Positions 581-58,904 of a stretch of 64,000 nucleotides of DNA are shown here, piece after piece (position 1 is the stretch's first letter; the number at the start of each line of letters is the position of its first letter). The DNA comes from Podarcis erhardii (Eukaryota). The notes under the pieces are model-generated. The model was not told the DNA's origin. It ran no database searches and worked only from the letters and a program-made list of their open reading frames with translations. The stretch lies in assembly GCA_964252035.1 (NCBI GenBank), contig OZ176204.1. The stretch is one strand, 5' to 3'. A program made the translations under genes and the position numbers.

Positions 581-949
581 CTAGCTCACTAACGTGAGTG
601 AGGAAGGATAATATTTAATCAATATATCTTCTCCTACTATCCACAACATTCCCACACAGGGTTCCCTAACTTGATAGTGAGCAATGGGTCATCTCCACCC
701 CAGGTGGACTAAAAATTAAGTCCTGCTTATGAAGTTGTTGTGGGTGTTTGCAAATTCGTGGCTGGAAAGAGACCAAGTGAGAAGGGTGACTTGCACAGGG
801 GGACAAAAGGACGGGATTTTGAAATGAGGTCGAGTCTGCTGTTTAGACATCTTGACCATTCGGCAAAGGAGCAGTGGAGAGGGGGGTCATTATATTTCAG
901 TACAAAGAAATGGGAGTTGCTCAGTTTGTCTGCTTGTGGATCTTCACAG

Positions 950-3900
950 GCAGCAGACGGCCATCCTGGCAGACCTGGTGAAGGATGTGCCCTTGGAATT
1001 TGATTTCCTCTTCTCAGAATCACAGGCAGAAGTGATCTCTGGGAAGCAAGAAGGTAGGTGTTGGGCCAGAAAGGCTCGCTCACTCCATCATCACTGTGAT
1101 GAGGCTGCATTTTAATATTTTAATGTTTCAATATTTTAATGTTGTATTTTAATCTTTTTTTAAGTTGTATTCATTCAACTTGTTTTTATTATTGCTTGTT
1201 AGCTGCTCTGAGCCCGGCCTTGGCTGGGGCGGGCAGGGTATAAATAAATAAATAAATAAATAAGTTGTATTCATTCAACTTGTTTTTATTATTGCTTGTT
1301 AGCTGCTCTGAGCCCGGCCTTGGCTGGGGCGGGCAGGGTATAAATAAATAAATAATCATCATCTTAGGGAGTTTGGCAAAGGGTGAAGGGAGAGAGGGGG
1401 GAAGTTAGGTAGTGAGGCAGCACTGCGCAGGATCTGGGGGCTTAGCTAGCTGTTACACCAGCTTAACTTGCTGTTGGCGGTGCCTGCCCCTTGGGGCTGT
1501 TCCCTCCCCTCAAACTTCACAGGGTGCTACTCAAGTCCTGTACCTTCAAGGAACCCAACACTGCTTTTGATTCTCTTTCTTCCCCCACCCCCAATTTCCC
1601 AGGAGTCTATTCTTGGATAGGCATCAACTTTGTATTGGGAAGATTTGACCACGAAGAAGGTGAGACTGCGGGAAAGGGACAGTGGAGTTGAATGGGTAGG
1701 TAGAAGTTTTCTCTTTTGGCTCAGTTCCCTCTTGAGGGAGGGAATCTCCAGCACAGTTTGCTCGATTCCCAGCAGGAATGGAGATTTGGCTTTCCCACAT
1801 GACCTGAACTAAGGCCCCTTCCCATTCTGCAGTTTAGCAGGAGTGAAGGTGAGCAAGAGAGACGAGAACGGATCCCCACTTCTTCCCTAACTTCTGCCCC
1901 CCCCCGCCCCCCCAAACCCTAGACATTTCTAGTGTTCAGCCCAAGAGGTATGGGGATGTGCCATCTTCCATCTCCATCTTCCATTGCTTTGGAAACTCTC
2001 TCTTTCTCTTTCTCTTTCTCTCCCTCCCTCTGGGATTGTAGAGGAAGATGCAGTGATTTCTGTGACCCTGGCTGGCCAGGAAGAAACCCTGGTGCGAAAG
2101 AGGACTGTTGGGATCCTTGACATGGGAGGTGCCTCTCTGCAAATCGCCTATGAGGTGCCAACTTCCACGTCCTTCTCTTCCCCGCAGGAGGTGTGTAGTT
2201 TGGGAAGGAAATATGTGCTATGGTCCAGGTTGGGCACTGTTTCTTACTCCTGCTCTCCCTCCCCCGCCACTCTCCCCTCTGCTACCAACAGGAGGAAGCT
2301 GCCAAGAGCCTGCTTGCTGATTTCAACCTTGGCTGTGACATGCAACACACGAAGCACGTGTACCGAGTCTACGTCAGCACCTTCCTGGGCTTTGGGGGCA
2401 ACTACGCCCGACAGCGCTACGAAGAGCTGATGCTGAATCAGACCACCACCCGCAACAGGTGATGTCCTCATGCTGCCAGGTTTCAAAAGGTCTGGCTAAA
2501 GGCAGCTCTGGATTCCACTGCCCCCAGGAGTTCAGGGTGTGGCATCCTGGGAGAGAGTGTGTGTTTATTTGTAGGAGGCAGGCTCCCTGAGTGATGAGAT
2601 CAATGGGAGAAGTTTTTGATGGTCCGCATGCATACCTCTAGCCTGTTTCGGGTTGGCACAGAAGAACTCACCAATCATAACTTGCCGCTGGGGGTGTCTG
2701 TGTTTTCCCAACCCTGAAGTTTAGGCTCTTGTTGCAGGTTGCAGGGTGAGCAGCTTGGCGCAAATGCTGGGGTGCCCGTCTTGGACCCCTGCCTGCCTGT
2801 GGGACTGGAGGATGTTGTGGAGCATGGCGGACAGACCCTGCACATCAAGGGCCAGGGGGACTGGCAGTCGTGCGCGAAGCAAGTGCGCCTCCTGCTGGCG
2901 GGAGACAACAGAACCACGGTCTCTCTGCGCAACACCTATCAGGCACCAATTGACTTTGTTAACAGCGAATTCTATGGGTTCTCTGAATTCTACTACTGCA
3001 CCGAAGATGTGCTGCGCCTGGGAGGACTGTACCACATGCCCACGTTCACACGCGCTGCCCAGGTGACTCTAGAATATGTGATCACTTTGCCAGGATAAGG
3101 GGGTGTTGTTTCTGTGCCCACTCATGTCTTTTGCCTCCTTCCAGGATTTTTGCAGCCTGAGCTGGTCCTTATTGACCCAGAGGTTCCGAGACCACCTATA
3201 CTCAGCACATGCAGATCTGCACCGTGTCAAGTAAGAATCCATTCTTTCTTTTCACAGAGAATGTGCTTGGTCCTTAACTCTTCTTCCATGGGCGGTGAAG
3301 GGGTGGGGGTAAGATTGCCCCCCAGCAGACTTCTCAACTGATGAGCCTCAGTCCAGCGTATTTGTGATGGAGTCTCTATGCTCTGCTTGCAGGTACCAGT
3401 GCTTCAAATCAGCATGGATGCACCAAGTGCTACACGAAGGCTTTCATTTCCCCATGGATTATTCTGGTCTGCGCACAGCCCAGTTGGTGTATGATCGTGA
3501 GGTACAATGGACACTGGGAGCCATTCTCTATAAAACTCGCTTTCTGCCACTCAGGTAACCTAAATTGCTGCCCACTACATGTTTTCTCATCTTAAGAGTG
3601 GTAGAGTTCTTTTGGTTACTTCAGAATCAGTCTTTCAAACAAGGTCTTCAGTAAAGAACTGGACCATGGCACTTGACTAGGAGTAAAATGCCGGTTTTCT
3701 AGCCCCAATTAGAGTGTTCAGTCATATTAATATGTGAACTTGGGAGTAAGCCTCACAGAGTTCAAGATGAGGAGGGCTTACTCTCAATAAGTATGCATAG
3801 AATTGAGCTTGAAACATGGAGGAGTTCAGTACTCTGTGTTTAGTCTGAAGTTGCATTTTTTAAACTTGAGAAAGCAAGTGATCTGCCAGCAGAGCTTTTC

Positions 3901-4498
3901 TGAAAGAAAAACAAAACAACAGAAAAGGAGAAAGCAGAGGCATGCAGAGACCTGGTTTGTTTTTAAGAGGTACGTAAGGGAGAGACATCAAAAGCACCCT
4001 CAATGAAGCACAGAGCCTGCGTGAAAAGGAAGGATCCTTTATCAGTAGGCAACATGGTGTCTTAAACCATTAAACTAAACCTATGTTTTCGACATCTCTC
4101 ATCTATTTACAAATGGACTGTACAAATGGACTGGCCTGAGAAAAGCCAGGTATTTGGAAATCATACTTAATTGCAGTATCTGGAATGCTTCTGTCTGCTA
4201 GTTGCAAGAGATTCAAGCTTAGCGCAGCTTCACATTTTAACTTCAGACTGATTTTTCTTTGTTTTTCAGGGATCTCCGCCAGGAGAGCATCCACCAACCT
4301 CGCAGCCCTTGGCTCCGTCTCTCCTTTGTTTATAACCACTACCTTTTTTTTGTGTGCATTCTTGTGGTGATGCTTGCAATTGGACTCTACCTCTTCCGTC
4401 TGCGCCGCATCCACCAGAAGCAGTTGCACGTGGCACAGCTGGACCTGCTGTGGCTAGCAGAAGTGGTGCCGCTGCCAGCACAGGAGGCAGCCTCCTGA
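950..4498 (+). CDS. ENTPD7: Ectonucleoside triphosphate diphosphohydrolase 7, 5'-partial (last 8 coding exons, ~425 aa)
   Basis: Exons 950-1053, 1603-1659, 2042-2190, 2292-2458, 2738-3062, 3145-3230, 3393-3554, 4270-4498 (TGA); all GT-AG and phase-consistent. Apyrase motifs GKQEGVYSWIGINF and DMGGASLQI. C-terminal TM followed by RLRRIH..LDLLWLAEVVP, which matches ENTPD7 rather than ENTPD4. Confidence 0.96.
1161..1355 (+). repeat. Exact 100-bp-period tandem duplication of a LINE-like 3' tail
   Basis: 1161-1255 is identical to 1261-1355; each copy ends in (TAAA)n. Confidence 0.9.
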
Positions 4499-5562: not shown

Positions 5563-5888
5563 CAGTGTTTTTCAACCTTTTTTGGGCAAAGGCACACTTG
5601 TTTCATGAAAAAAATCACGAGGCACACCACCATTAGAAAATGTTAAAAAATTTAACTCTGTGCCTATATTGACTATATATAAAGTAATTCTCTTGAATAG
5701 GAATCAAATAAACACAAAGAAAGTATTTTATAATTACTTTATTATGAAATAGTAAGTAAACAGAAATATGAAAAATTATAAAATACTTTATTTTTAAATC
5801 TTTCGAATTTTTCAATTTTTCCCACGGCACACCAGGCAACATCTCGCGGCACACTAGTGTGCCGCGGAACAGTGGTTGAAAAACACTG
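5563..5888. mobile_element. Non-autonomous hAT (Charlie-like) MITE, 326 bp
   Basis: Perfect 15-bp TIRs CAGTGTTTTTCAACC / GGTTGAAAAACACTG; perfect 8-bp TSD GCTTACAC at 5555-5562 and 5889-5896; repeated subterminal GGCACAC; 22-bp palindrome at 5845-5866. Confidence 0.92.
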
Positions 5889-6080
5889 GCTTACACCACC
5901 TGGAGAGTTTACTGAAGTGCTCCTTGTCAGGAAACACAGACCACTTTTGATTTCAGCCCAATACCAATTAGATGCTATGGATAGAGGCTGGAGTATTACC
6001 CTGGCTGAATTTCAAGCACTTCTGGGCCCCATATCAGATGCCTTTAACAAAAGACAAAGAAAGCTCACATACTAAAAAAA

Positions 6081-6086
6081 TTTATT
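6081..6086 (-). terminator. Candidate polyadenylation signal for ATP6V0E2
   Basis: TTTATT on + (AATAAA on -), downstream of the putative 3'UTR exon that starts at 6561. Other candidates lie near 6221 and 5478. Confidence 0.4.
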
Positions 6087-6957
6087 TTCACGATACCAGT
6101 TTACACTCAATAAATACAAATACACAACATTATAAATAATAGTGGAAGGGGGAATTCTAGGCAAATGCATCCTAGTGCAGCAGCCTCAGTGCTAATGGAC
6201 AAAAATAGGGAGAGAACAGATTTATTGGGTGAGCATCACCATGTAAAAGTGAGGAAGGTGTCCAGAGTTCCATCAGCAATTATTCAATCTTAGCGCTCAT
6301 TACAGGACTTTCAAAATGCAAACATTTTCCCTAACTGCCAAGAGAGGAATATTTAGTTACAACATCAAACCCAAGAGCAGATGCCACCAAGATGCATCAA
6401 TTAAAACAGGTGGGAGATGGTTAAACAAGTGAAATGGTCCCTTCATATGTTTGGGTCTTAGCCCTATGCTGTGGGGAAATTTAGAGTGCAAACAAAAGAT
6501 CCATTGAGTTAGTACTGGAAAGGACAAGGGGTGGAGCTGTTATCTAGCATCAGAAGGAAGCCTAGGAAAAAGAGAAAAAGATTTCTTAGTATTGACCTTA
6601 CCCCAGCAGGATAGAAGATATCTGGGAACAATCAACCTGTTGCCCTTTCAGTGAGATTTACCATAGCTACCTTTTACATACAATGAGAAAGTGACCTGTC
6701 CTATAGAACCACAGAGTGGCAACACTATTGGAGACAGATTACAGGTACCTTTCTGGTTCTATTGGTTAAGCCAGGGATGGGACCTGTGATTCTCATGTGG
6801 CTGGACTATGATCCCTGACTGGCTATACTGGCTTGGGCTAATAGGAGTCAGAATCTAATAATATCTAGAGAACCATAAGTTCCCCATCCCTGGGCTATGC
6901 CGTTGGCAGGTGAGTCGGGCAAGGAACCCAGGATGGGAATCTTTGTAAACTGGAAGC

Positions 6958-7382
6958 CAGCGGCGTAGTGTGGGTTCGGGGCAAGGCAAGTAATTTGCGC
7001 CCCCTAACCCGGGGCAAGGCAAGTAATTTGCGCCCCTAACCCCTAACCTGCCGCCGCTGCCAGCTTCTTCTTGCTGCTGCCTGGGCTGGTCGGGTGTGGT
7101 TCTCTCCCGCGCTGAGCGCTGTGCTGGGCGGCCGCTGCACTGTTCCTCCCCCAGATAGTCCCTCCCTCGCTCTCCACTCCGCACCGCAACGCACGCCCGG
7201 CACCCTCCCCCTCCACAGTGGGCGGCGACCCGGCAGCTCGGATCGGATTCGGACAGCCAGCACTGCAGTGAGAGAGAGTGAGCCAGGTAGGGGCAGAGAG
7301 CTGCGAGTGCGAGCGCGCCCCCCCCCCAAAATATTGCGCCCGGTGCGGCTGGCCCCCCTGCACCCCCCACGCTACGCCACTG
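6958..7382. mobile_element. Non-autonomous hAT-type element with GC-rich interior, 425 bp
   Basis: Imperfect 17-bp TIRs CAGCGGCGTAGTGTGGG / CCCACGCTACGCCACTG; perfect 8-bp TSD CTGGAAGC at 6950-6957 and 7383-7390; subterminal direct repeat GGGGCAAGGCAAGTAATTTGCGCCCC x2. Confidence 0.88.
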
Positions 7383-7515
7383 CTGGAAGCAAGTAGATTC
7401 CTTGTTCTTACAAGCTATTAATGAGTTGCATCTAATGTATTTGTGTGTTAGTAAGGTAGGTTAGGTAGCGCTGGATAGAGAAAGTACCTGTTGAATTGGT
7501 TGATAGTGGTGCAGT

Positions 7516-9270
7516 TCACTCCCACAGGAAGCGCACATACCAGATGGTCTCATTCTTCAGCTGGGGTCCAAACAGCGGGTTGGCCTGGGCCAGGAGTGCT
7601 ATAAGCCAGCTGCAAGGGAAAGATAGGAAGGAGACATATAAACTGGATCACAACTCCTTTTGTACTAGTGCTGAAATACAAAAAGTCATATTTTGCCACT
7701 AACTGCTAGGTCATTTTTGCAAGTAACAGTTATTCTTATAAAGAGGACAGTGTCACTGTAGGAGGGATATACAATCTAGGGAGCAAGGTCTTCTAGTTCT
7801 TTAAATGTACTACAAGGAGATAAGATCTGCCCTGGTGCATTATGCCTGAGAGTGTGTAGCTTAGCATAACAGCTGAGCCAGACAGGATGTTAGGGCAGCT
7901 AGAACAGTCTAGTGCTTTGGTGTATGATCAGAGATGGTCTAAGGCTTGTTATGGGATGCAAAATCCACTCCTTGTTCATATGTGGGGTCCTGGGAGCATC
8001 ATGCATGAATGATGCTAGGACATATTGGAAGAGACAGTGTACCATGATCCAAGATTACCCAAAAGCTTATTTTATGAAAGAGATGCAGGCTGTTTATGCA
8101 CCTATGTGTAGAATAAGGACCTGGCAACTGTGAAGCAACTTGAGCATCTCTAAGGTGGTGTATACAGGAGAGCTTCTTCTATTTGGGATTCCTTCCTAGA
8201 TTCCCAATATTCATGAAGCAGCCACTTAGATAAAGTTATGAGGGTGGTTGGTTTCCTGCTGGGTACAACCCAGCCCTACACCCACAACCCATCTCCCCTA
8301 TGCAATACTCACAAGAGATAGCAGGAAATGGCTGTAGTCACCAACATGGTAATAATTACTCTGTGAAGTGAAAAAATGAAAAAGAAAAAAGATTGAGTAA
8401 AGCTGCAAGCCTAACCCTACTTACCTGAGAGTAAACCCCACTGAATATATTAGGAATTACTTCTGAGTAGACATGGATAGGATTGTGCTGTTACTGAAAC
8501 AGTCAAGCAGGTCACACAGGAGAAAGGATTCCCAGATCAGGCACTCCTCAACGCTCTTCCTCCCTGCTCCCACACCCGGACTCCTATATACCATGTTCAT
8601 AAGAGAAAAATACCCTAGCCCAGCCCTTTGGCTGCTATACTAGTTTGCTATTTGCAGGGTCGCTGGTGTTTCCAACGTGAGGTAGCACTCATAAATGTGA
8701 TCCCCCCCCCCCCGACATGGCAGTCTGAAGCGATGCAGAGTCCCCTGTTCATAGCATCCGTGGATCAGGCCTCCTTCAAGGCCAAAGGCGGCTGCAGAGA
8801 AGGAAAGCCTGCGAGTGTCGCACTTGCGGGGGAAGCGGGTGCAGGTCCCTGCTAAAGATTTTGTGTGTGTCATGTCATCTCCCAATATATCAATATCTCT
8901 ATACAGTGATCTTTTTGGATATATAGGTCATTCTCACATATCTATCTATCTATCTATCTGTCTGTCTGTCTGTCAATCAATCAATCAATCAATCATCTAC
9001 AGTATCTAGATCTAGATCTAGATATTCTCAAAGCCTTTAGCAGGGACCACCATCACCCTTCCCTCGCAATTATAGATCACAATGCATATATTGATCTATC
9101 TGGCGATGACCGAGAGACCTGGCGACGGATCGGGCGGGCGGAGGCTGCGCGGACGGGGAGCCTCACCCGCGGTTGGGCCCCTTGGGCACGAGCCACGGCC
9201 CGGCGATTCCCACGAGCCCCCAGAAGACGGAGAAGAGGATGATCGGCAGCGCGAAGCTGTGCGCCGTCAT
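7516..9270 (-). CDS. ATP6V0E2: V-type proton ATPase subunit e2, complete, 81 aa
   Basis: Minus-strand exons 9270-9167 (104 bp), 8360-8313 (48 bp), 7609-7516 (94 bp incl. TGA), all GT-AG. Spliced product: [81 protein letters not shown]. The MTAHSFALP start and YVRFLWE end are e2-type (e1 has MAYHGLTVP and YLKYHWP). Confidence 0.97.
8941..9022. repeat. Compound microsatellite (TCTA)n(TCTG)n(TCAA)n plus (TCTAGA)n
   Basis: Read directly from the sequence; lies in ATP6V0E2 intron 1. Confidence 0.9.
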
Positions 9271-9560
9271 AGCGAGGCGGGTTGGGAGCGACCGACGGGA
9301 TGAAGGACAGGAGGCCGCCGCCGAAACCGCAAGAGTGAGTCTCCGCTCCTCCGCCTGTCTCTTCCTTCGCTTCTGGTCCGGTCCGCAACCAATCAGAACT
9401 CCGTGCGCCCCCTCCGGTGTTTTCCCCCCTTCGCCACCCCGTATTTTGGAGCCTCGGTTCCGAATGGAGCTGCCTGTGTCATACCGCCCCCTGCTGCCTC
9501 GGAGGGTGTATTGCGAGGAGCGGAGAAGGCAGGTCGAATCCTACTAGAGCTGTTGCAGGC
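9090..9560 (-). promoter_or_regulatory. CpG island / ATP6V0E2 promoter with CCAAT box
   Basis: High GC and CpG density around exon 1; AACCAATCAG with CCAAT at 9389-9393, about 120 bp upstream of the ATG. Confidence 0.75.
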
Positions 9561-10596
9561 ATGGGCATCGTATAGGCGTCCACTGGGGTTGGGGGTAGTT
9601 GCTCCCTCTAATGAGCCATGATCACCAGATTTACAGGTTTCTACTCCCCACCCCCTTGCTCTACAGAAAGGTTATAAAATTTGTAGACCCAGATATGAAC
9701 AAAAATCTGCAGGCACCAATCTTCACTTCTATTTTTTGAGAAAACTTACCCCTCCAACCTTTCAGGGTTTCTATCCATTTTAGACCATTTCTATACTACT
9801 TAAAATATACAAAAAATCCTCTAAGTGGTGTACAGAAAACAAGCTGATCAGAAAATTTTATGAATATGATGTTATGTATAAAAATGTTGCATTAGTGCAA
9901 CTTTACTAATACATAGAAACCAGTATCAGTTCCTTCTCCTTCTGACACCCATCCCCTCTCAGTATCCTGGCTCTCACTAAGCTCATTCATTGGTTTCTAG
10001 CTAATGAATGAAGCAATGGATGACATTAAAGAAACTAGATCTAGCCAATTTAATACTTGAGTGAAACACCTGTGTCTCCGCTCTTGGTTTGGTTTAAAGC
10101 ATCTTATGCCGGTCTTCACTGCTGGTGAAGTGAATGCTACCCCACTGAAAACAAGTCGGGTATCCAATACTGACAAGTAATGTATAAAAGAAAAATGTAG
10201 CAGCAAAGACAGTAAGTAGTCCATCATCTTTCAGAGTCACATTTTATAGCAAAAAATGTCCCCACCCCACCCCCCGCATCAGCAAACACTTTAAAAGATA
10301 CTCTGCTGACAACCTGCCATAATTATACCAATATTGAAGCAGGCTGGGCTGGGGCTGATTTCATGTTAGCCTCATTTTGCCGAGAAGCAGCGGTAGGGAT
10401 CTGCAGTAGTGTAGTACAACTCTGAATTGTAGGGTACATGATAGGGCTTTTTAGGGAAATGAAGCAAAGTGGGAGACTGTGATGTTGAGTGCAGCAGCAC
10501 TGCCCAGGAAAGAATTAAGGGCTTCAGCAATGAGTGAAAAGCCATCTACCCATTGTAGCAGGTCAACCCACTGAGAAGGAAAGGGATAGATGTGTA

Positions 10597-11665: not shown

Positions 11666-17316
<5,651 letters not shown>

Positions 17317-17565
17317 CGCTCCTTAAAGCTGCAACCCGGAAGCGACTCGCTCTTGACACGGAAAGGAATCCGAGCTATTTCCGGAAACGCCGCGACCGCG
17401 CACTCGGTGACCGCGACGCCACGTGACAGGTAGGACGGCGCCGCCTCTCGCGTGTGCGCCGCCGCCGAGGCCTCAGGGGTGGGCGGGGCTTCCTCCTCAG
17501 CTCAGGGGTGGTTTGGCGCAGAACTGCCGACATCCGCCGCGCCTCCGGAGCGGCCCCGAGGCGGA
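17317..17565. promoter_or_regulatory. Bidirectional CpG-island promoter shared by COX15 and CUTC
   Basis: Divergent start codons 250 bp apart; ETS/GABP-like CCGGAAG (~17336) and TTTCCGGAAA (~17378-17387); E-box CACGTGAC at 17420-17427; GC-rich from ~17070 to ~17790. Confidence 0.85.
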
Positions 17566-20500
17566 ATGAGGAGATGGGACCGGAAGCAGGGCCTGGCAGA
17601 AGGGTGTGAGGGTGAGTGGGCGGAGGGACGGCCGGAAGGAAGGAAGCGCCAGGGATCCCGAGGAATCCCGAGGGCGGGGCCGGGGCCGGAAATCCGGGCG
17701 GCTTCAAGGCCTCCCTTTCCCCCTCCCCAGAAGCAAGAGGAGCCAGAAATTTTAATACTGTTGTTCGGGGGGGGGGTGCCCTGAGCACACTCACGGCCGC
17801 TATGTGCATTCAGCAAAACCAAGTGGGATAGATTTTATTGGCATTTTTACATATCAGTCCTTTGTGATTAAAACGTAAAACCCAATTGAGTCCAAAGGGG
17901 TCCTTATTCTCAGGTGAGCGTCTGCAGGGTTGTAGCTATAGGCCTGAGGCCTGCAATCTTGCCTGCACTCAGTTGGGCTTGCTTGCTCGTTTGCGTATTT
18001 ATTTATTTAATTTCTATATTTTTAAGGGGGGAGTTGAAGCGCTTTACAAGCTACATTGAAGCATCAATTAAAGCAATCCTGAATAAAATATAATGGAATA
18101 AAAACAAATATAAAGTGTACCTTCAAAGCGACAGAGTTAATAGGAAACTGAAACATTACCTTAAAAGATTTCAAAACAAAACATAACAAAGGAGGTCAAC
18201 TACAGAATGCACATTTAATGCACTATGTTACTGGCCAAAGTTCCATCTGTTAGAGTTTCTAGAGTAAGTTCTGCATTTGCCTAAGGGAGACGCAGCAGGT
18301 TACAGGCTGGCCTTGCTGTCAGCTGTTCCCACGCATCTCAACTTCATCTTCCTGCTGGAGAACCTGAATCCTCTGAAATATCTGGAGAAAGGTGGAAGGG
18401 AAGTCAGCCCTGCTCAATTTAGTATTCTGAAAGGAGGAAAAATCTGAATCACCAGCACAGACTTTTTATTCAGAATGTAGAATGCTACTTTAAAGTGAGT
18501 CAGACCATAGAGCCATCTAGTTCAGTATTGTTTGCACTGACTTGACAGCAGTTCTCCAGGGTTTCAAACGGAGCAACCTAGCCCTACTTGGACTTACTGG
18601 GAATTGAACCTGCAGCCTTCTGAATACAAGGCACTACCGCTGAGCTGTGACCCATCCTTGAATCCTTCAAATTGGAGGCCCCCCCCCTTCAAACAAACAA
18701 ACATATAAACACACAGACAGACAGATCTGTTCAGACAATGCAACACAGAGAACAAGATCCAGGGAGAGCAAGAAGGCAAGGGGATCAGGAGTTACAGCAA
18801 AAGTAGCGTTCAACTTCCCATGTGTTTTTTCTGTACCTGTTTTGAGCTGATACAGATCAAGCTTGATTTCTTCTTTAAATTCACATGGTGATACAAGTTT
18901 TCTGTTCTTATTGTGTGTACCCTTTAAAGCAGCTGCTGACAGGTTAAGGCTTTGTAAGGTTACTGGTGATGGGGAATCTATGAAGCTTCTATTTCTGAGA
19001 GCTGGATGTGCTTGGGTGAGCAAGATGAAAGAAGCCAGTTAAAAGACAAAACAAGTGCTGGAGCTTGAGGTGGAAGGAATCGCCTCTCTCAATCACTGTC
19101 TCACTTTTCTCTGAGACAGAGCCTGATTGGCCCATAACCTCTGGTTGTGTTTCTCTTCTAGGAATGGCCAATGGCTTTCTCATGGAAGTATGTGTTGATT
19201 CTGTGGAGTCTGCTGTGAATGCAGAGAGAGGAGGTAATCCCATAAAAAAGATGGAAGATGAAATACTTAAGGATCACTGAGGGGTCTTTCTAGGCCAGGA
19301 CACCTCCGGGTACACATGCTATATGTATTGAAAAGAGAGGCACACTTACTTCCCCAAGCAGTGTGAAACTGTTTTATGAACCCTTTTAGGCTTGAAAGGT
19401 AGGATATTAAATGTTATAAACTGTTCAGTAAGTAAAGACTTCCAAAGTTCTGATCTAGGTTAGTGACACATAGATTCAGGATATGCATTTATATATTTTA
19501 ATTGCCTGCAACCCAATTACTCTAGCCTTTGAGAGTAGGGCAAACTGCAAATTTAAATGAATAAATGTTAATTGCCTTGTCTTCAGCTGCTTTAACTAAA
19601 GTTGTCCTGCTCTGTTTTGCTGCAGTGCATTATAAAACATGGGCTGAGATACTCAAATCACCTATTAATTGATTTTCTTTCTTAGTTACTGCCTGAGTAG
19701 GGGTTGAAGTCTATGTGGTGACCAATCTCACTCTTGGCTCGAAAATTTCCAGCACTCCTACCCATTGGTTTATTTTATTTATTACTTAAATTTGTTAGTT
19801 GCTACTTAACAAACAAACAGCATCCCCATACAGTGGTGCCCCGCAAGACGAACGCCTCGCAAGACGGAAAACCCGCTAGATGAAAGGGTTTTCCATTTTG
19901 GAGGCGCTTCGCAAAACGAATTTCCCTATGGGCTTGCTTCGCAAGACGAAAATGTCTTGCGAGTTCCTGCGGGGTTTCCCCCCCCCCCTTTTCCTAAGCC
20001 CTAAGCCGCTTATCAGCTGATCCGCTAAAAGCCGCTAAACCGCTAATAGCACTAATCCGCTAAGCTGTCAATGGGCTTGCTTCACAAGACGAAAAAAACG
20101 CTATACGAAGAGCCTCACGGAACGGATTAATTTCGTCTTGCGAGGCACCACTGTACCTTAACACACCCAACATAGATACATTAAAACCAAGGAGGGGGAG
20201 GGAGGGAATACTTTAAAAAACACTTCTAAGTGGCCACAGATAGTTAAAGGCCAAAGGCCTGCTTATAGAGGAAGGTTTTTGCCTGGCAGCTAAAGACATA
20301 TAATGATGGAGCCGGGTGAACTTCCCTTGTTGGATTATAGCAAGGACCACATGGTTTCTTCATTATGTAGATCTCTGTTAAAATCTTGCAAACCACTTAT
20401 ATTCAGAGGTTTGATGTGTGACCCTGTTGCAGGTGCTGGCCGCCTTGAACTGTGTGCCAACCTCATGGAAGGAGGAACAACACCTACTATAGGTGAGTTG

Positions 20501-23500
20501 GCACATACAAGCCAAGATCTAATCCACCATTTCCCTGCAAGATGTAGCACTACTGAGCAGCCAAGCAATGTGGAGAAATGTTTGGACCTCTGCCCTCTAG
20601 GCCCTCTGCTCCTGGAACAGAAAGAAAATACCTGTTGTTCTGCTTGCTCTTTTTGTGTTCTTCTGTGTCATCAGCACCTCCTGGTCTTTTTGCAAGACAG
20701 GCTGTTATTTAATCACCCTATTTCACCTTCCCTTCTTCAGCAGCCCCTTCTCCTAAATTTTGCAAAAAGCGTTTGACATCTGTCCTGTTCTCTTCTCACT
20801 TGCTTCTCTTAGACCCAGTGCTGATGGTCTAGCTCTGGGATGGGGAACGTGTAGCTCTCCAGGTGTTGTTGGACTCCCAACTCGCCTCAGCCTAAACGGT
20901 CAGTGGTCAGTTGATTGGAGTTGTAGTTCACCAACATCTGGAGGGCATCTTCTTGGCTACTCCAGACATAGGCAGAACTGACCTAGATGGCTCAGTGGTC
21001 TCCCTTTGTATAAGGCATCATGCTATGTTCCTAAGTTCCTCCGTACCATGTTCTAGGTTTCACTTCTTGTCCATCTCATAGAACAATCCAGTACATAACT
21101 GACACCATGTCCTAAACCTGTTTGACTGCAGGCCTTTTGCAAGTGGTGAAGCAGTGTATAAGGGTGCCTGTATTTGTGATGATCCGCCCCCGTGGGGGGG
21201 ATTTCCTCTATTCTGACCGAGAAGTGGAGGTGATGAAGGCAGACATCCGACTTGCCAAGCAACATGGGGCTGATGGGTTGGTGTTTGGAGCCTTGACTGA
21301 GGATGGACGTGTGGATACAGAGCTCTGCACAGCACTGCTGGGTGAGCAGGCTTTACTTTTCATAGGGCTTATTTGGTGCTTGAGTAGTGATTGTTGTACA
21401 GTGCCACCAGCTAATAATTCCTTGGTTCAAATTAAGAAATATTTCCTACAGGCAAGAGGCAAGATCCATGAGATACTAGGGCCTGCCTCACTATATTGAG
21501 CTATTCATTTACAGTATAAGAAAACATCTAATCCACCCTTCATCATGTGAAGGGTGGGTTACAGTGGAATAAAAACAATGCAGCACTATTTATAAAAACA
21601 TATATAAATGGAGCTTATTGGGGGGAAATGGCCATGGTGCGGAACTTCTGACTCCCCACTCCAAAAAAAAGAGGCTGGGGAAATATTGAAGTTTCACCTG
21701 ATGCCAAAATGACAACAGCGCTTTAGCACCAGTCGTGCTCCTAGGGCAGTCTTCACCAAGCTGGTATCCTCCAGGTGTTTGGGGCTATAACTCCCATTAG
21801 CCCCAGCTAATTTGACAAAGGCTGCTCTAGAGGGAGGACATTTCATAGGTCATTCCGTAAATGAATGGATTATTCAGATAAAGCAGGAGCCAAATGCTGT
21901 GATGGTTGGGATGAGTGACCTTTGTTTGTAAGAAGGGGCTCTGTGCAGATCTGATGGAGAGAGTGATAGGTAGCCATAAATTCTGCACAGAAGGAAGAAT
22001 TATCCAGAAGAATAGGAAACTTTATTGAAAGAATGATAATTGTATGGTTTTTCTGGACCCTCAAAAATGCAAAAAAAAATAATTACTAGCTATTTTCTCT
22101 ATTTAACTGAAACTGACAGTATATCTTCTGATGAAGAATTAGTCTTGCTAGGGGAAGCCTGTCCTCTCCCTGCATGCCCCCCAAAATTGGCTCTAGCTAG
22201 GGGAAGCCTGTCCTCTTCCTATATGTCGCCCCCCCCCCCCGGAACAGCACACAGGAGGAGGAAAGGTGGGGAAAGTTCTGTGAGGCAAGCTGAAATACTG
22301 CAGCTAAACTATTTTAACCAGAAGCCAATATCCATTCACTCCATGGTTGATTATTCCACAGGCTACCTAGGGAAGAGTGGATACATCTTCAGTCTACTCC
22401 AGGATTGCTTTTTTAAATAAGTACATAAGCCCAACATGTGTGAGGGGTTTGATACACAAAATGTGAAAAGAAATGCCATTCAAAGAGCTAGCTAGTGGGC
22501 AGTCTTAGTGGAAATGAGAAAGGATTATGAATCCATATTGCAGAAATGGTGTCAGATGACTACAGCCACCTTGGTTGAACCATCTGGAGAACTTTCCTTT
22601 CTTTCCAGGGCCAGTAGCAGAAGCATTGCCTTCACAAAGACAACCCCTAAGCAAAGGTATACTAACCATCTGGGATCTGTTCTTTTTGCAGCTGCTTCCC
22701 GCCCTCTGCCAGTCACCTTCCACAGAGGTGAGTTTCTGCTTGCTGGTTTCCCATAGACATCTGCTTGGCCACTGAGAACATGATGCTGGACTGGATAGGC
22801 CATTGGACAGGTCCAGCAGACTCTTCTTACAGAGCTTGGAGTGGGGAATGAAAGCCTGACTGCCTAATTGCAGGATGTAGGCTCAGGCACAATGGCCTTA
22901 CCTTGGTGAGGTGGGGGGACTATGAGAATGTACTCTGGGAATTGCACATATTAGAACTGTCCACCAGGGATTTGGGACTAGGCTAAAGCCTGGAATATGC
23001 CAGACTGACGTGCTCCATTTTTATCAGCAGCTTTTGACATGGTCTATGACCCTTTGGCAGCCTTGGAAACGCTAATATCGATGGGCTTTGAACGGGTCCT
23101 GACTAGTGGCTGTGACAGCTCTGTTCTAGAGGGGCTGCCCTTGATAAAACGACTGACAGAACAGGTGAGGTGTCATCTCTACCAAATTTGTAACTCTGAT
23201 ACACTTTTCTTGCCTACTTAAGAGTGGGCTATCCAAGGAACTGGACAGAGTGTGGTGGGGCAGAGAAATGCCAGCTAGCAGTCTTTCATGGTCTTCAGAT
23301 GGGTGAGGGTTTCTCAACGATTAAGGGTAAAAACTGGCCTCCCCATTGAATATACAGAAACTGTGCCTTGCACCTTCTGATACAATAGCTTCTTTCAGTA
23401 TTGCATGAATTCCCATAGGCTACCGCAATAAATTAGCTCCCATCTTCTCTTTTAAGTATACAATATGCGCATGGCACACCCATATCTCACACCTGTCCAG

Positions 23501-25226
23501 CAGAATGCACAACAGTCAAAAAAGTCTACGAAGGAGTCACTCGGTTATTTTAAAGTTGCTTCCAGTCTCTAACACTGGGGTGAAGTTGAAGCAGTACCTG
23601 ACAGCATATAGTTTCTGAAGTTCAACCATCCCAGGATGGGGGTGAAACTTGGTAGATCCTCAGTTGTTTGACTTTGCAGAGGTGAAATATACACAATGAT
23701 AGACGGAGTGTGGGAGCATACTTTCCTAGAGGAGCATGTAAGAAACTCAACATGACCGTATTACTTGGAGCAAACCCTTTGAAAAGCAGCATTAAAAAAA
23801 TGAAATTAAATATTGCAAATAAATACATTCTACATCTTCCTTAACAGAATATTTGTGCTACCCATTTGGTGTGTTTTCTCCTATAAGCAAGACCACTAAA
23901 CCTATTTTCTCTTCCTTTTCAGGCTAAGGGCAGGATTGTTGTAGTGCCAGGTAAGACTCTGCAGTGAGTACCACTTGTTGGCATAGATCAGAACTCTAGC
24001 ACCAACCAAGCATGTTGTTAGGCAGCCCCACTTGCCCAAGTGGCAAGAAGTCCAGGAACAGAGCTTTAGGGTGCAATTCCCTTTGGATGAGAGTGCACGA
24101 AAGACTTAATCTTCATAATATTTACTTATTTGCAGATATAAAAACAGACAGAGCGTAGTAGAAATAGATGGATGTCACAACTGCATTAGGTTAAAGGAAT
24201 AGTGTGGACACCCACGCACAACCCCTACCTGCTTAACTTGCTGCTGTAGACTCTCTGCCTCTGTCAATCCAAAATCAATTTGCTTCTAGCTATCTGTCCC
24301 TTCCTTAAACTCTTATAGGTATGGCATTATGAAGGCAAAGATTTCCAGGCATCAAGGAACATTAACTAATGTTCCCTTATCGTGTTCCTGAGTGATCACT
24401 AACTGTCAGGCAAAACAAAAGCAGTGGGCCATTTGCTAATCAGCAGCTAAACTGATAAGATAATACCTGATGGGCATCTGCTCCCTTCCAGAGGCATATT
24501 TAGGAGCTCTGCCTGCTTCAGAGCTGTGAGTGCAGCCTGCATTGACCCTAAAGATTAGCCCCTGGTTCAGAGCAAAGGGATTTCCCCCATCTATTTAATG
24601 ACCCAGAATGTAGCTCTGTCTATTCCTGCTTAACTTCATGTTTGTGACTGAGTGATGGGTTCTCTCCACCAGGGGGAGGCATAACCGAGAGAAACCTGCA
24701 GAGAATCTTAGAAGGCTCTGGCGCCTCTGAGTTTCACTGCTCGGCGCGCTCACTCAAAGACTCAGGAATGAAGTTCAGGTAACTGAGCAAGTTTCTATCC
24801 TGACTTACTGAGGGGCCCAAGCCTTGCTTCCATCTCCCGATGCAGCTCCACCGTTTGGGGTAGTAACTTGACTAAGAACATCTGGGGCACTGGAACCTGA
24901 CAGGTGCATTTAGCTGGGAGCAAGGCATCGTTGCATTAGGGATGGATTTGTGTCTGTAGCTCATAGTTGCAGATGCAATGGGTTACGGTAGCACCCAAAA
25001 GGCAACATGACAGCAGATTATGGCCCAGTGGGTAGGACTTAGGATGGTTCTTTTTCCGGCTCTTCTAGGTCCAGGTTCCAGACAGTAACCAAAGACTTGT
25101 TGGTATTCTTTTAGAAACCCTTACATTACCATGGGGGCCTACCTCTCCACACCTGAATATTCCATCAAGGTGGCCGATGTGGCTAAAGTGAGGACCCTGA
25201 ATGCAATTGCAAAGAATATCCTGTAG
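17566..25226 (+). CDS. CUTC: Copper homeostasis protein CutC homolog, complete, 267 aa
   Basis: Exons 17566-17611, 19162-19233, 20433-20492, 21132-21341, 22692-22727, 23031-23164, 23923-23950, 24673-24778, 25115-25226 (TAG); total 804 bp. Motifs LMEVCVDS, RLELC..L.EGGTTP, MIRPRGGDF, TFHRAFD, LTSG, PGGGI, EFHCSA. Exon 1 is less certain than exons 2-9. Confidence 0.95.
18493..18653 (-). mobile_element. tRNA-derived squamate SINE
   Basis: On the minus strand: A-box AGCTCAGCGGTAG and B-box GGTTCAATTCCC, followed by a body similar to the copy at 63546. Confidence 0.7.
19831..20153. mobile_element. Tc1/mariner-type MITE, 323 bp
   Basis: 22-bp TIRs CAGTGGTGCC(C/T)CGCAAGACGAA with 1 mismatch; TA TSD at 19829-19830 and 20154-20155; internal GCAAGACG and CCGCTAA repeats; in CUTC intron 2. 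Confidence 0.9.
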
Positions 25227-25879
25227 AACAAGCTACTGTGGGCCAGGAAGACCCAGAGCCCTGTGACCTGCGCAATCCATAGACTTAGACATTTCAACTG
25301 CATCCTTGCCAGCGCTTAAAGGACATGGGTCAATCAAATGAAGAAGCCTCTGCTTGTTTTTCTCCTATTCCCACTTGCTCCACAGCGTTTTTTCCTCAGA
25401 TGTCGTAATGCCGTTTTGTCTGTGGGGAGCAAATGACGGGGAGGGGCTTAATTAAAGGGGTACTCGCCATCGGGCAACACTCTCCCTGTTAAGGTCTCTT
25501 CTCAAATAAACCCTGAAGCCACTCCGTATCACTGTGGCTTTTCTTCCTGTAGAGGCCATGGCAAGACTTTGAACTGCTCCCAAAGGAAATGGGCCGGGGG
25601 GGGGGTGGAAAGCACATTGGGTGTTGCAGGCTTCCTTCATCCCACCTCAGTTTGATTGGAGTGGAAGACGACTTCTTTGAAGTACATAGAGGAAAGTGGT
25701 AAAGCAATATTGCAATTGCAGGAGGAGGAATCTCTCTGAGAGGGTTAGAGAGCAATCACAAGGTGACCAAGCACTGCAGTTCCGTACACCTGACAGCAAA
25801 ATTTCATTGTTGTCTGGTTCTGGATTCTGTCCTACAGAAGTCATTAGAGAGGGTGAAGTTTCTATGTAATTTATATAAA

Positions 25880-28027: not shown

Positions 28028-58904
<30,877 letters not shown>

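What the first reader, a model, noticed from the sequence alone, without database searches (positions are those of the whole stretch)
7516..9270. Hidden intact ATP6V0E2 gene between ENTPD7 and COX15, probably its ancestral location
The three exons (104/48/94 bp) are too short to appear in the ORF track but splice into an intact 81-aa V-ATPase subunit e2. As I recall, human ENTPD7 and COX15 are directly adjacent at 10q24 and ATP6V0E2 is at 7q36. Paralogon logic favours the lizard arrangement as ancestral: ENTPD7/SLC25A28/NKX2-3 (10q24), ENTPD4/SLC25A37/NKX2-6/STC1 (8p21) and ATP6V0E1/NKX2-5/STC2 (5q35) belong to related whole-genome-duplication blocks, so e2 beside ENTPD7 mirrors e1 beside NKX2-5. 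That would imply an intron-preserving relocation in the mammalian lineage (inference).
Basis: partly seen in the sequence, partly recalled or inferred. Interest (0 to 1): 0.8.

Follow-up and report, generated by a model that had tools for sequence, protein, structure and literature searches.

The report
Annotated V-ATPase e2 gene, lizard
This is an ordinary, intact, already annotated lizard gene for the small V-ATPase subunit e2; it lies beside ENTPD7, as it does in birds and a frog, and it is mammals that moved it elsewhere.

Summary
Three minus-strand exons (9270-9167, 8360-8313, 7609-7516; 104/48/94 nt) have canonical GT..AG borders. They splice to an 81-aa protein that matches Pfam ATP_synt_H over its full length.

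The gene is not hidden from public annotation. The protein is 81/81 identical to the RefSeq "V-type proton ATPase subunit e 2" of Lacerta agilis and Podarcis muralis. Those records are annotated in the same CUTC-COX15-e2-ENTPD7 order.

A tree splits e1 from e2 at 100/98 support and places the window protein among squamate e2.

Synteny:
- Lacertids, a skink and a guineafowl share COX15-e2-ENTPD7.
- A frog has e2 tail-to-tail with a 605-aa GDA1_CD39 gene, as in lizards.
- Sturgeons and a shark have e2 between PYROXD2 (human 10q24.2) and a CREBRF-like gene.
- Echidna and marsupial e2 keep both introns but lie elsewhere; the echidna copy is beside a KRAB zinc-finger gene, like human 7q36.1.

So the ENTPD7-side position is ancestral for tetrapods, the 10q24-like block is ancestral for jawed vertebrates, and mammals relocated the gene at the DNA level.

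A 2025 paper already lists atp6v0e1/2 in this paralogon. The scan also holds a duplicate first-reader note on this same stretch.

Verdict: known gene, modest evolutionary footnote.

The parts
9167..9270 (-). ATP6V0E2 coding exon 1 (104 nt; Met1 to the first two bases of codon 35; first transmembrane segment and the PKGPNRG loop)
   Evidence: ATG at 9270, GT donor at 9166-9165; the same exon end (…PKGPNRG) in skink, bird, echidna, marsupials, sturgeon and teleost; hydrophobic segment at about residues 3-28.
8313..8360 (-). ATP6V0E2 coding exon 2 (48 nt; start of the second transmembrane segment)
   Evidence: AG acceptor at 8362-8361, GT donor at 8312-8311; the 15-residue exon is 100% identical in three lacertid loci and conserved in all e2 loci fetched.
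7516..7609 (-). ATP6V0E2 coding exon 3 (94 nt, includes the TGA at 7518-7516; rest of the second transmembrane segment, the NET sequon and the C-terminus)
   Evidence: AG acceptor at 7611-7610; conserved in all e2 loci.
8361..9166 (-). Intron 1 (806 nt), containing tetranucleotide microsatellites (GATT/CAGA/GATA runs at about 8930-9010) and a G run near 8700
   Evidence: sequence read directly.
7610..8312 (-). Intron 2 (703 nt)
9100..9600 (-). CpG-island-like 5' end and likely promoter of ATP6V0E2 (GC 0.66, CpG observed/expected 0.95)
   Evidence: The intron stretch 8400-9000 has GC 0.47 and CpG o/e 0.36. The promoter role is inferred, not shown.
5743..7515 (-). Probable 3' UTR of ATP6V0E2. 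The first AATAAA signals on this strand are at 6226, 6086, 5792 and 5743. There is a conserved block near 6360-6539.
   Evidence: signals. (6360-6539 matches the skink locus downstream of its e2 stop). The true extent is not shown because no reads could be laid.
828..4495 (+). 3' part of the ENTPD7-position gene (GDA1_CD39 family), convergent with ATP6V0E2
   Evidence: collinear with the 607-aa GDA1_CD39 gene of skink and guineafowl. PF01150 on 1933-2427 and 2718-3095.
11669..17322 (-). COX15 (haem A synthase), directly upstream of ATP6V0E2 on the same strand
   Evidence: exon-by-exon collinearity with skink and guineafowl COX15. PF02628 on 11669-11881, 12909-13130 and 14863-15138.
17434..25232 (+). 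CUTC, head-to-head with COX15
   Evidence: matches to the CutC genes of L001 and L002. PF03932 on 21116-21496 and 23009-23218.
39843..44268 (+). Exons of an ABC transporter in the position that ABCC2 holds in human 10q24
   Evidence: PF00664 on 39843-40241 and PF00005 on 43936-44268. Human order SLC25A28, ENTPD7, COX15, CUTC, ABCC2 from PMC8522836. The name ABCC2 is inferred from position only.

Best explanation
The stretch is the functional lacertid orthologue of ATP6V0E2. It encodes the 81-residue, two-helix membrane subunit e2 of the V0 sector of the vacuolar H+-ATPase. It is transcribed from a CpG-rich promoter about 2 kb downstream of COX15 and ends tail-to-tail with ENTPD7. The position is inherited, not new. 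The e2/ENTPD7 pair goes back at least to the tetrapod ancestor. COX15-e2-ENTPD7 goes back at least to the sauropsid ancestor. In the jawed-vertebrate ancestor e2 already lay in the same 10q24-like (NKX2-3) block, there next to PYROXD2 and a CREBRF-like gene, mirroring e1 beside CREBRF in the NKX2-5 block. In the mammalian stem lineage the whole gene, introns included, was moved by a DNA-level rearrangement into what is now the 7q36.1 KRAB zinc-finger neighbourhood. Shown here: gene structure, family, orthology, purifying selection and the neighbours in each lineage. Inferred: expression in this lizard, promoter and UTR limits, the direction and timing of the move, and its mechanism.
For: Structure and family. 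Identity to annotated e2. The protein is 81/81 identical to the RefSeq e2 of Lacerta agilis and Podarcis muralis. Those genes are annotated between COX15 and a 607-aa GDA1_CD39 gene in three lacertid assemblies. Orthology: the e1|e2 split has 100/98 support, both clades include cartilaginous fishes, and the window protein sits inside squamates (99/82) and sauropsids (98/95). Solved structures: e2 chains of rat and bovine brain V-ATPase score E=1e-32 against 7e-25 for human e1. There are two hydrophobic segments. Synteny: skink, guineafowl including a downstream Mito_carr gene, frog Pelobates with a convergent 605-aa GDA1_CD39 gene 8.7 kb downstream. Sturgeons and shark have e2 head-to-head with a 571-579-aa Amino_oxidase gene, identified as PYROXD2 (nine collinear exons). 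The sturgeon downstream gene is 'CREB3 regulatory factor-like'. PYROXD2 lies on the contig of the same length as e2 in eight sauropsids, and 11 locus tags away on a 2.1-Mb quail scaffold. Human positions: PYROXD2 at 10q24.2 (PMC3169529); SLC25A28-ENTPD7-COX15-CUTC-ABCC2 with no e2 named (PMC8522836); ATP6V0E2 between ZNF862 and ACTR3C in a zinc-finger cluster at 7q36.1 (PMC8606216). Echidna e2 has a KRAB-C2H2 gene 8.5 kb upstream. Marsupial e2 has no called gene within 10 kb. Of all window ORFs, only the e2 exons match these mammalian loci. Intron positions are identical in all lineages. The published paralogon lists atp6v0e1/2, crebrf/rfl, entpd4/7 and slc25a28/37 around NK4 genes (PMC12019251).
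Against: The only hint is that RNA-labelled runs hold 12-28% of the sampled words of 7400-9400. The frog neighbour is known only by Pfam family, length and orientation because no DNA was served. It could be ENTPD4 rather than ENTPD7, and COX15 was not seen within 10 kb upstream in the frog. A second frog showed nothing within 10 kb. Shark and sturgeon do not have COX15 or ENTPD7 beside e2, so the exact slot is not ancestral for jawed vertebrates. Linkage of fish PYROXD2-e2 to fish ENTPD7/COX15/NKX2-3 was not measured here. Flanks were limited to 10 kb, so 'not beside' in mammals means 'not within 10 kb'. The e1-CREBRF adjacency was not seen within 10 kb in duck and rests on gene lists in papers and on memory.
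Confidence: 0.85

Rival explanations
1. The mammalian (7q36-like) position is the ancestral one, and e2 was inserted next to ENTPD7 in non-mammalian tetrapods.
For: Only 10-kb flanks were seen. One frog and the teleost gave no informative neighbours.
Against: Frog and sauropsids share the ENTPD7-side position. Shark and sturgeon have e2 beside PYROXD2, a 10q24.2 gene in human. No non-mammal showed a zinc-finger neighbour. The e1 paralogue lies in the sister NKX2-5 block (PMC12019251). This rival would need at least two independent moves into the same block.
Confidence: 0.04
2. Both the tetrapod slot and the mammalian slot are derived. The ancestral arrangement is PYROXD2-e2-CREBRF-like as in shark and sturgeon. 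The frog neighbour is a coincidence or is ENTPD4, so COX15-e2-ENTPD7 is a sauropsid novelty and mammals moved e2 from a fish-like state.
For: Two deep lineages share PYROXD2-e2. The e2/CREBRF-like pair mirrors e1/CREBRF (PMC12019251). The frog gene was identified only by family, length and strand.
Against: The frog gene has the same family, nearly the same length (605 vs 607 aa) and the same convergent orientation directly downstream of e2 as in lizards and birds. A chance repeat of that is unlikely. PYROXD2 is on the same chromosome as e2 in eight sauropsids, so both arrangements lie in one block.
Confidence: 0.1
3. The lizard copy is a silent relic or pseudogene that merely looks intact.
For: No reads could be laid.
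Against: Over the 64 tested codons there are 0 non-synonymous against 3 synonymous changes to each of three lacertids whose introns differ by 5-7%. Splice sites are canonical and the frame is intact. There is a CpG island at the 5' end. RNA-labelled runs hold a share of the words that matches the size of the mRNA. The gene is called in all squamate RefSeq annotations listed.
Confidence: 0.01

Closest known systems
RefSeq 'V-type proton ATPase subunit e 2' of Lacerta agilis, Podarcis muralis and relatives (protein P0122; XP_033005811.1, XP_028586442.1 and others)
   Same: 81/81 identical protein. Same three-exon structure and the same neighbours CUTC-COX15-e2-ENTPD7.
   Different: The window comes from another lacertid genome: 93-95% identity in the introns and flanks, and three synonymous differences in the 64 codons compared.
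Mammalian ATP6V0E2 as seen in solved brain V-ATPase structures (6vq6 chain e from rat, 6xbw chain e from cattle)
   Same: Same length, E=1e-32 over residues 1-62. Both intron positions are the same in echidna and marsupial genes. 85-88% identity.
   Different: Chromosomal neighbourhood. Human e2 lies between ZNF862 and ACTR3C at 7q36.1 (PMC8606216), and echidna e2 lies beside a KRAB zinc-finger gene. Neither lies between COX15 and ENTPD7.
ATP6V0E1 (subunit e1), the ubiquitous paralogue
   Same: Same Pfam family, 81 aa, two transmembrane segments.
   Different: Only 60-70% identical. It forms a separate clade at 100/98 support. In duck it lies after ERGIC1 and RPL26L1, that is, in the NKX2-5 block.
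NK4 (NKX2-3 / 2-5 / 2-6) paralogon described in PMC12019251, Fig. 1A
   Same: It lists atp6v0e1/2, crebrf/rfl, entpd4/7 and slc25a28/37 as paralogous families kept around NK4 genes after the two genome duplications.
   Different: In the text available to me the paper does not discuss the mammalian relocation of ATP6V0E2 or the exact COX15-e2-ENTPD7 slot. The figure itself could not be read.

Membership tests
V-ATPase subunit e (Pfam PF05493, ATP_synt_H) | Full-length match to the family profile above the curated cut-off | tested here: met
   84.7 bits against a cut-off of 25, profile positions 1-62 of 62.
V-ATPase subunit e (Pfam PF05493, ATP_synt_H) | Small (about 81 aa) hairpin of two transmembrane helices joined by a short basic loop | tested here: met
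   (81 aa); hydrophobic windows at residues 3-28 and 35-60 flanking PKGPNRG.
V-ATPase subunit e (Pfam PF05493, ATP_synt_H) | Physical assembly into the V0 sector | not testable with these tools
   Inferred only from E=1e-32 similarity to chain e of solved V-ATPases.
ATP6V0E2 orthology group (e2, not e1) | Groups with e2 and not e1 in a phylogeny that includes cartilaginous and ray-finned fishes | tested here: met
   the e2 side holds all 21 e2 rows at 100/98. The window protein sits in the squamate set at 99/82.
ATP6V0E2 orthology group (e2, not e1) | Conserved intron positions (after the second base of codon 35 and after the second base of codon 51) | tested here: met
   the same exon ends in lizards, bird, echidna, marsupials, sturgeon and teleost.
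ATP6V0E2 orthology group (e2, not e1) | Shared neighbourhood with e2 of related species | tested here: met
   CUTC-COX15-e2-ENTPD7 in lacertids, skink and guineafowl.
Functional (expressed, spliced) gene | Transcripts spanning junctions 9167/8360 and 8313/7609 | not testable with these tools
The only indirect sign is a 12-28% word share in RNA-labelled runs.
Functional (expressed, spliced) gene | Purifying selection on the coding sequence | tested here: met

The most novel reading that the evidence does not exclude
ATP6V0E2 was cut out of the NKX2-3/ENTPD7/COX15 block and moved, introns and CpG promoter included, into the KRAB zinc-finger region (7q36.1-like). This happened once, in the mammalian stem before monotremes split off. 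The move has not been explicitly described, and it may have changed the gene's regulation in mammals.
Probability: 0.4. Interest if true: 0.3.

Novelty: already known. Interest (0 to 1): 0.15.

Why it matters
It matters little for the gene itself, which is a routine, already annotated housekeeping-type gene. The useful by-product is a tidy synteny series: shark and sturgeon have PYROXD2-e2-CREBRF-like; frog has e2 convergent with ENTPD7; sauropsids have COX15-e2-ENTPD7; mammals have the 7q36-like position. This series dates a small single-gene, intron-preserving relocation to the mammalian stem. It also adds the e/CREBRF gene pair as a marker of the NK4 paralogon. That could serve as a worked example of single-gene transposition within otherwise conserved vertebrate synteny. 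It also flags that mammalian e2 regulation evolved in a new chromosomal context.

Tried and rejected
1. The protein-atlas search on a 33-residue PYROXD2 exon piece gave only meaningless short 'hypothetical' clusters. The gene was identified instead by an exhaustive HMMER search plus cluster names.
2. Looking up Podarcis muralis PYROXD2 isoform X5 to measure its distance from e2 failed, because that product is not on record. I fell back on equal contig lengths and on the quail locus tags. These show the same chromosome or scaffold but give no distance in lizards.
3. I tried to test e1-CREBRF adjacency in duck. ERGIC1 and RPL26L1 lie upstream of e1, but no CREBRF exon lies within 10 kb downstream. 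This is inconclusive.
No other route to reads was tried.
5. Pfam on the ten longest stop-free stretches of 25.9-63.3 kb gave nothing. Ten plus-strand stretches gave two ABC-transporter exons.
6. PMC12019251 has no supplementary text held.
7. I considered and rejected three readings. A retrocopy is ruled out because introns are present in every lineage. An e1 paralogue is ruled out by the tree. A squamate-specific insertion is ruled out because birds and a frog share the position.

Full report
OBSERVATION

On the minus strand, an ATG at 9270 opens a 104-nt exon that ends at 9167 before GTGAGG. A 48-nt exon (8360-8313) follows a pyrimidine-rich tract ending in CAG and is followed by GTGAGT. A 94-nt exon (7609-7516) follows ...CCCTTGCAG and ends in TGA. 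Spliced, these give 246 nt, that is 81 codons plus a stop.

The protein matches Pfam PF05493 (ATP_synt_H, V-ATPase subunit e) from end to end of the model (E=6.4e-24, 84.7 bits, cut-off 25). It has two hydrophobic segments (about residues 3-28 and 35-60) around a PKGPNRG loop. The translation also shows an N-E-T sequon near the C-terminus.

None of the exons reaches the 60-aa ORF list.

WHAT IT IS

The best database matches are all annotated 'V-type proton ATPase subunit e 2'. The skink is 91% identical, birds 88-90%, mammals 85-88%. e1 proteins are only 60-70% identical.

One member of the skink cluster, P0122, is 81/81 identical to the window protein. P0122 is the RefSeq e2 of Lacerta agilis, Podarcis muralis and relatives.

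Non-coding DNA of the window is 93-95% identical to the three public lacertid loci and identical to none. The window is therefore from a further lacertid. The gene is already in public annotation for this family and for some fifteen other squamates.

A maximum-likelihood tree of 41 e1 and e2 proteins splits e1 from e2 at 100/98. Both sides contain cartilaginous fishes, so the duplication predates jawed vertebrates. The window protein sits in a squamate set (99/82) inside a sauropsid set (98/95).

Residues 1-62 hit chain e ('subunit e 2') of the solved rat and bovine brain V-ATPases at E=1e-32. Human e1 scores 7e-25.

- From each of three lacertids: 3 synonymous and 0 non-synonymous changes.
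- From the skink: 14 and 6.
- From a marsupial: 27 and 11.

The 5' end is CpG-island-like (GC 0.66, CpG o/e 0.95). All of this indicates a gene under purifying selection.

The only hint of expression is that RNA-labelled runs hold 12-28% of the sampled words of 7400-9400. That is about the share the exons and UTRs occupy.

SURROUNDINGS IN THE WINDOW

The window is exon-by-exon collinear, in inverted orientation, with the skink and guineafowl loci. Pfam confirms the families. The order is:
- GDA1_CD39 gene in the ENTPD7 position: 828-4495, plus strand, convergent with e2.
- e2: 7516-9270, minus strand.
- COX15: 11669-17322, minus strand.
- CUTC: about 17434-25232, plus strand, head-to-head with COX15.
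- ABC-transporter exons: 39843-44268, plus strand.

This is the human 10q24 order SLC25A28-ENTPD7-COX15-CUTC-ABCC2 (PMC8522836) with e2 added.

SYNTENY ELSEWHERE

All flanks seen were 10 kb.

- Three lacertid assemblies, a skink and a guineafowl have CutC(-), COX15(+), e2(+), GDA1_CD39(-). In the guineafowl a Mito_carr gene follows, in the SLC25A28 position.
- In the frog Pelobates fuscus a 605-aa GDA1_CD39 gene lies 8.7 kb downstream of e2 on the opposite strand. Family, size and orientation are the same as in lizards (607 aa). Nothing is called within 10 kb upstream. A second frog showed nothing within 10 kb.
- In three sturgeon genomes and a shark, e2 is head-to-head with a 571-579-aa Amino_oxidase/NAD_binding_8 gene. 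An exhaustive HMMER search with one of its exons, followed by cluster names, identifies it as PYROXD2. Nine exons are collinear with fish and turtle PYROXD2.
- The sturgeon gene downstream of e2 is 'CREB3 regulatory factor-like'. All 30 hits to it are from fishes and none from tetrapods, within the limits of a word-based search. In a sawfish and a clingfish the CREBRF-like gene sits on a contig of exactly the length of the one that carries e2.
- A tongue sole has an Ig-domain neighbour, which is uninformative.

PYROXD2 is at human 10q24.2 (PMC3169529). In eight sauropsids (skink, two Podarcis, Varanus, Rhineura, Hemicordylus, Sceloporus, a sea turtle) PYROXD2 lies on a contig of exactly the same length as the one carrying e2. 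In the bobwhite quail both are on one 2.13-Mb scaffold, eleven locus tags apart. So the fish neighbour and the sauropsid neighbours belong to one block.

MAMMALS

- Echidna e2 has a KRAB-C2H2 gene 8.5 kb upstream and no COX15 or ENTPD7.
- Three marsupials have no called gene within 10 kb.
- Of all window ORFs, only the e2 exons match these loci.
- Human e2 lies between ZNF862 and ACTR3C in the 7q36.1 zinc-finger cluster (PMC8606216).
- A dunnart PYROXD2 cluster is on a 684.6-Mb contig, while dunnart e2 is on a 316.8-Mb chromosome. This is a weak indication only, because the contig length is reported per cluster.
- Both intron positions are the same in echidna, marsupials, birds, lizards, sturgeon and teleost. 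The mammalian gene is therefore not a retrocopy.

INTERPRETATION

The simplest history has four steps.
1. Before the vertebrate genome duplications, an e-subunit gene lay beside a CREBRF-type gene in the NK4 block.
2. After duplication, e1 stayed with CREBRF in the NKX2-5 block. Duck e1 follows ERGIC1 and RPL26L1. e2 stayed with CREBRF-like and PYROXD2 in the NKX2-3 (10q24-like) block, the state kept in shark and sturgeon.
3. By the tetrapod ancestor, e2 lay tail-to-tail with ENTPD7. By the sauropsid ancestor at the latest, it lay between COX15 and ENTPD7.
4. In the mammalian stem the gene moved, introns included, to the 7q36-like region.

They stand with the limits that the exact slot is not shared by shark or sturgeon and that the COX15 side is not shown in amphibians.

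The paralogon itself is published. Fig. 1A of PMC12019251 lists atp6v0e1/2, crebrf/rfl, entpd4/7 and slc25a28/37 among the families conserved around NK4 genes.

RIVALS

- The mammalian position is ancestral. This would need repeated moves into one block and is contradicted by three outgroup lineages. Confidence 0.04.
- COX15-e2-ENTPD7 is only a sauropsid novelty and the frog match is a coincidence. This is possible because the frog gene is known only by family, length and strand. Confidence 0.10.
- The gene is a silent relic. This is contradicted by the substitution pattern. Confidence 0.01.

VERDICT

This is a real, correctly delimited gene, but it is ordinary and already annotated. The evolutionary reading is sound and largely anticipated in the literature. 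What may be new is only the explicit dating of a single-gene relocation to the mammalian stem.

Interest is low (0.15). Novelty class: already known.

Noticed in passing
L004:1-22580, L005, L006 (sturgeons); shark locus: In sturgeons and a shark, e2 sits head-to-head with PYROXD2. In sturgeons a 'CREB3 regulatory factor-like' gene follows it. The e2/CREBRF-like pair mirrors e1/CREBRF. All 30 database hits to CREBRF-like were from fishes, which suggests loss in tetrapods.
   Followed up: partly
L007:10001-21750 versus L004 (both Huso huso): Huso huso carries two e2 + CREBRF-like loci on different chromosomes. Only one has PYROXD2 within 10 kb upstream. They are probably the two copies left by the sturgeon genome duplication, with differential loss.
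   Followed up: no
L002:10001-10668 (guineafowl) and the bird entries: Bird e2 proteins are annotated as 113-121 aa because an in-frame ATG 120 nt upstream of the conserved Met is used. The conserved 81-aa reading starts at L002:10121. The extension may be an annotation artefact.
   Followed up: no
window:8690-9060: Intron 1 of e2 carries runs of tetranucleotide microsatellites (GATT, CAGA, GATA; about 8930-9010), short TAGATC repeats near 9010-9030, and an 11-G run near 8700.
   Followed up: no
window:17322-17434: COX15 (-) and CUTC (+) start within about 100-450 bp of each other. This is a head-to-head pair that probably shares a bidirectional promoter, as in skink and guineafowl.
   Followed up: no
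window:39843-44268: ABC_membrane and ABC_tran exons lie on the plus strand downstream of CUTC, in the position ABCC2 holds in human 10q24. The long stop-free stretches elsewhere in 25.9-63.3 kb had no Pfam match.
   Followed up: partly
window:34131-35020: Other first-reader notes on this window describe a hairpin-rich transposon-like element here (s1-224485, s1-224513). It lies in the CUTC-ABC transporter interval and is unrelated to e2.
   Followed up: no
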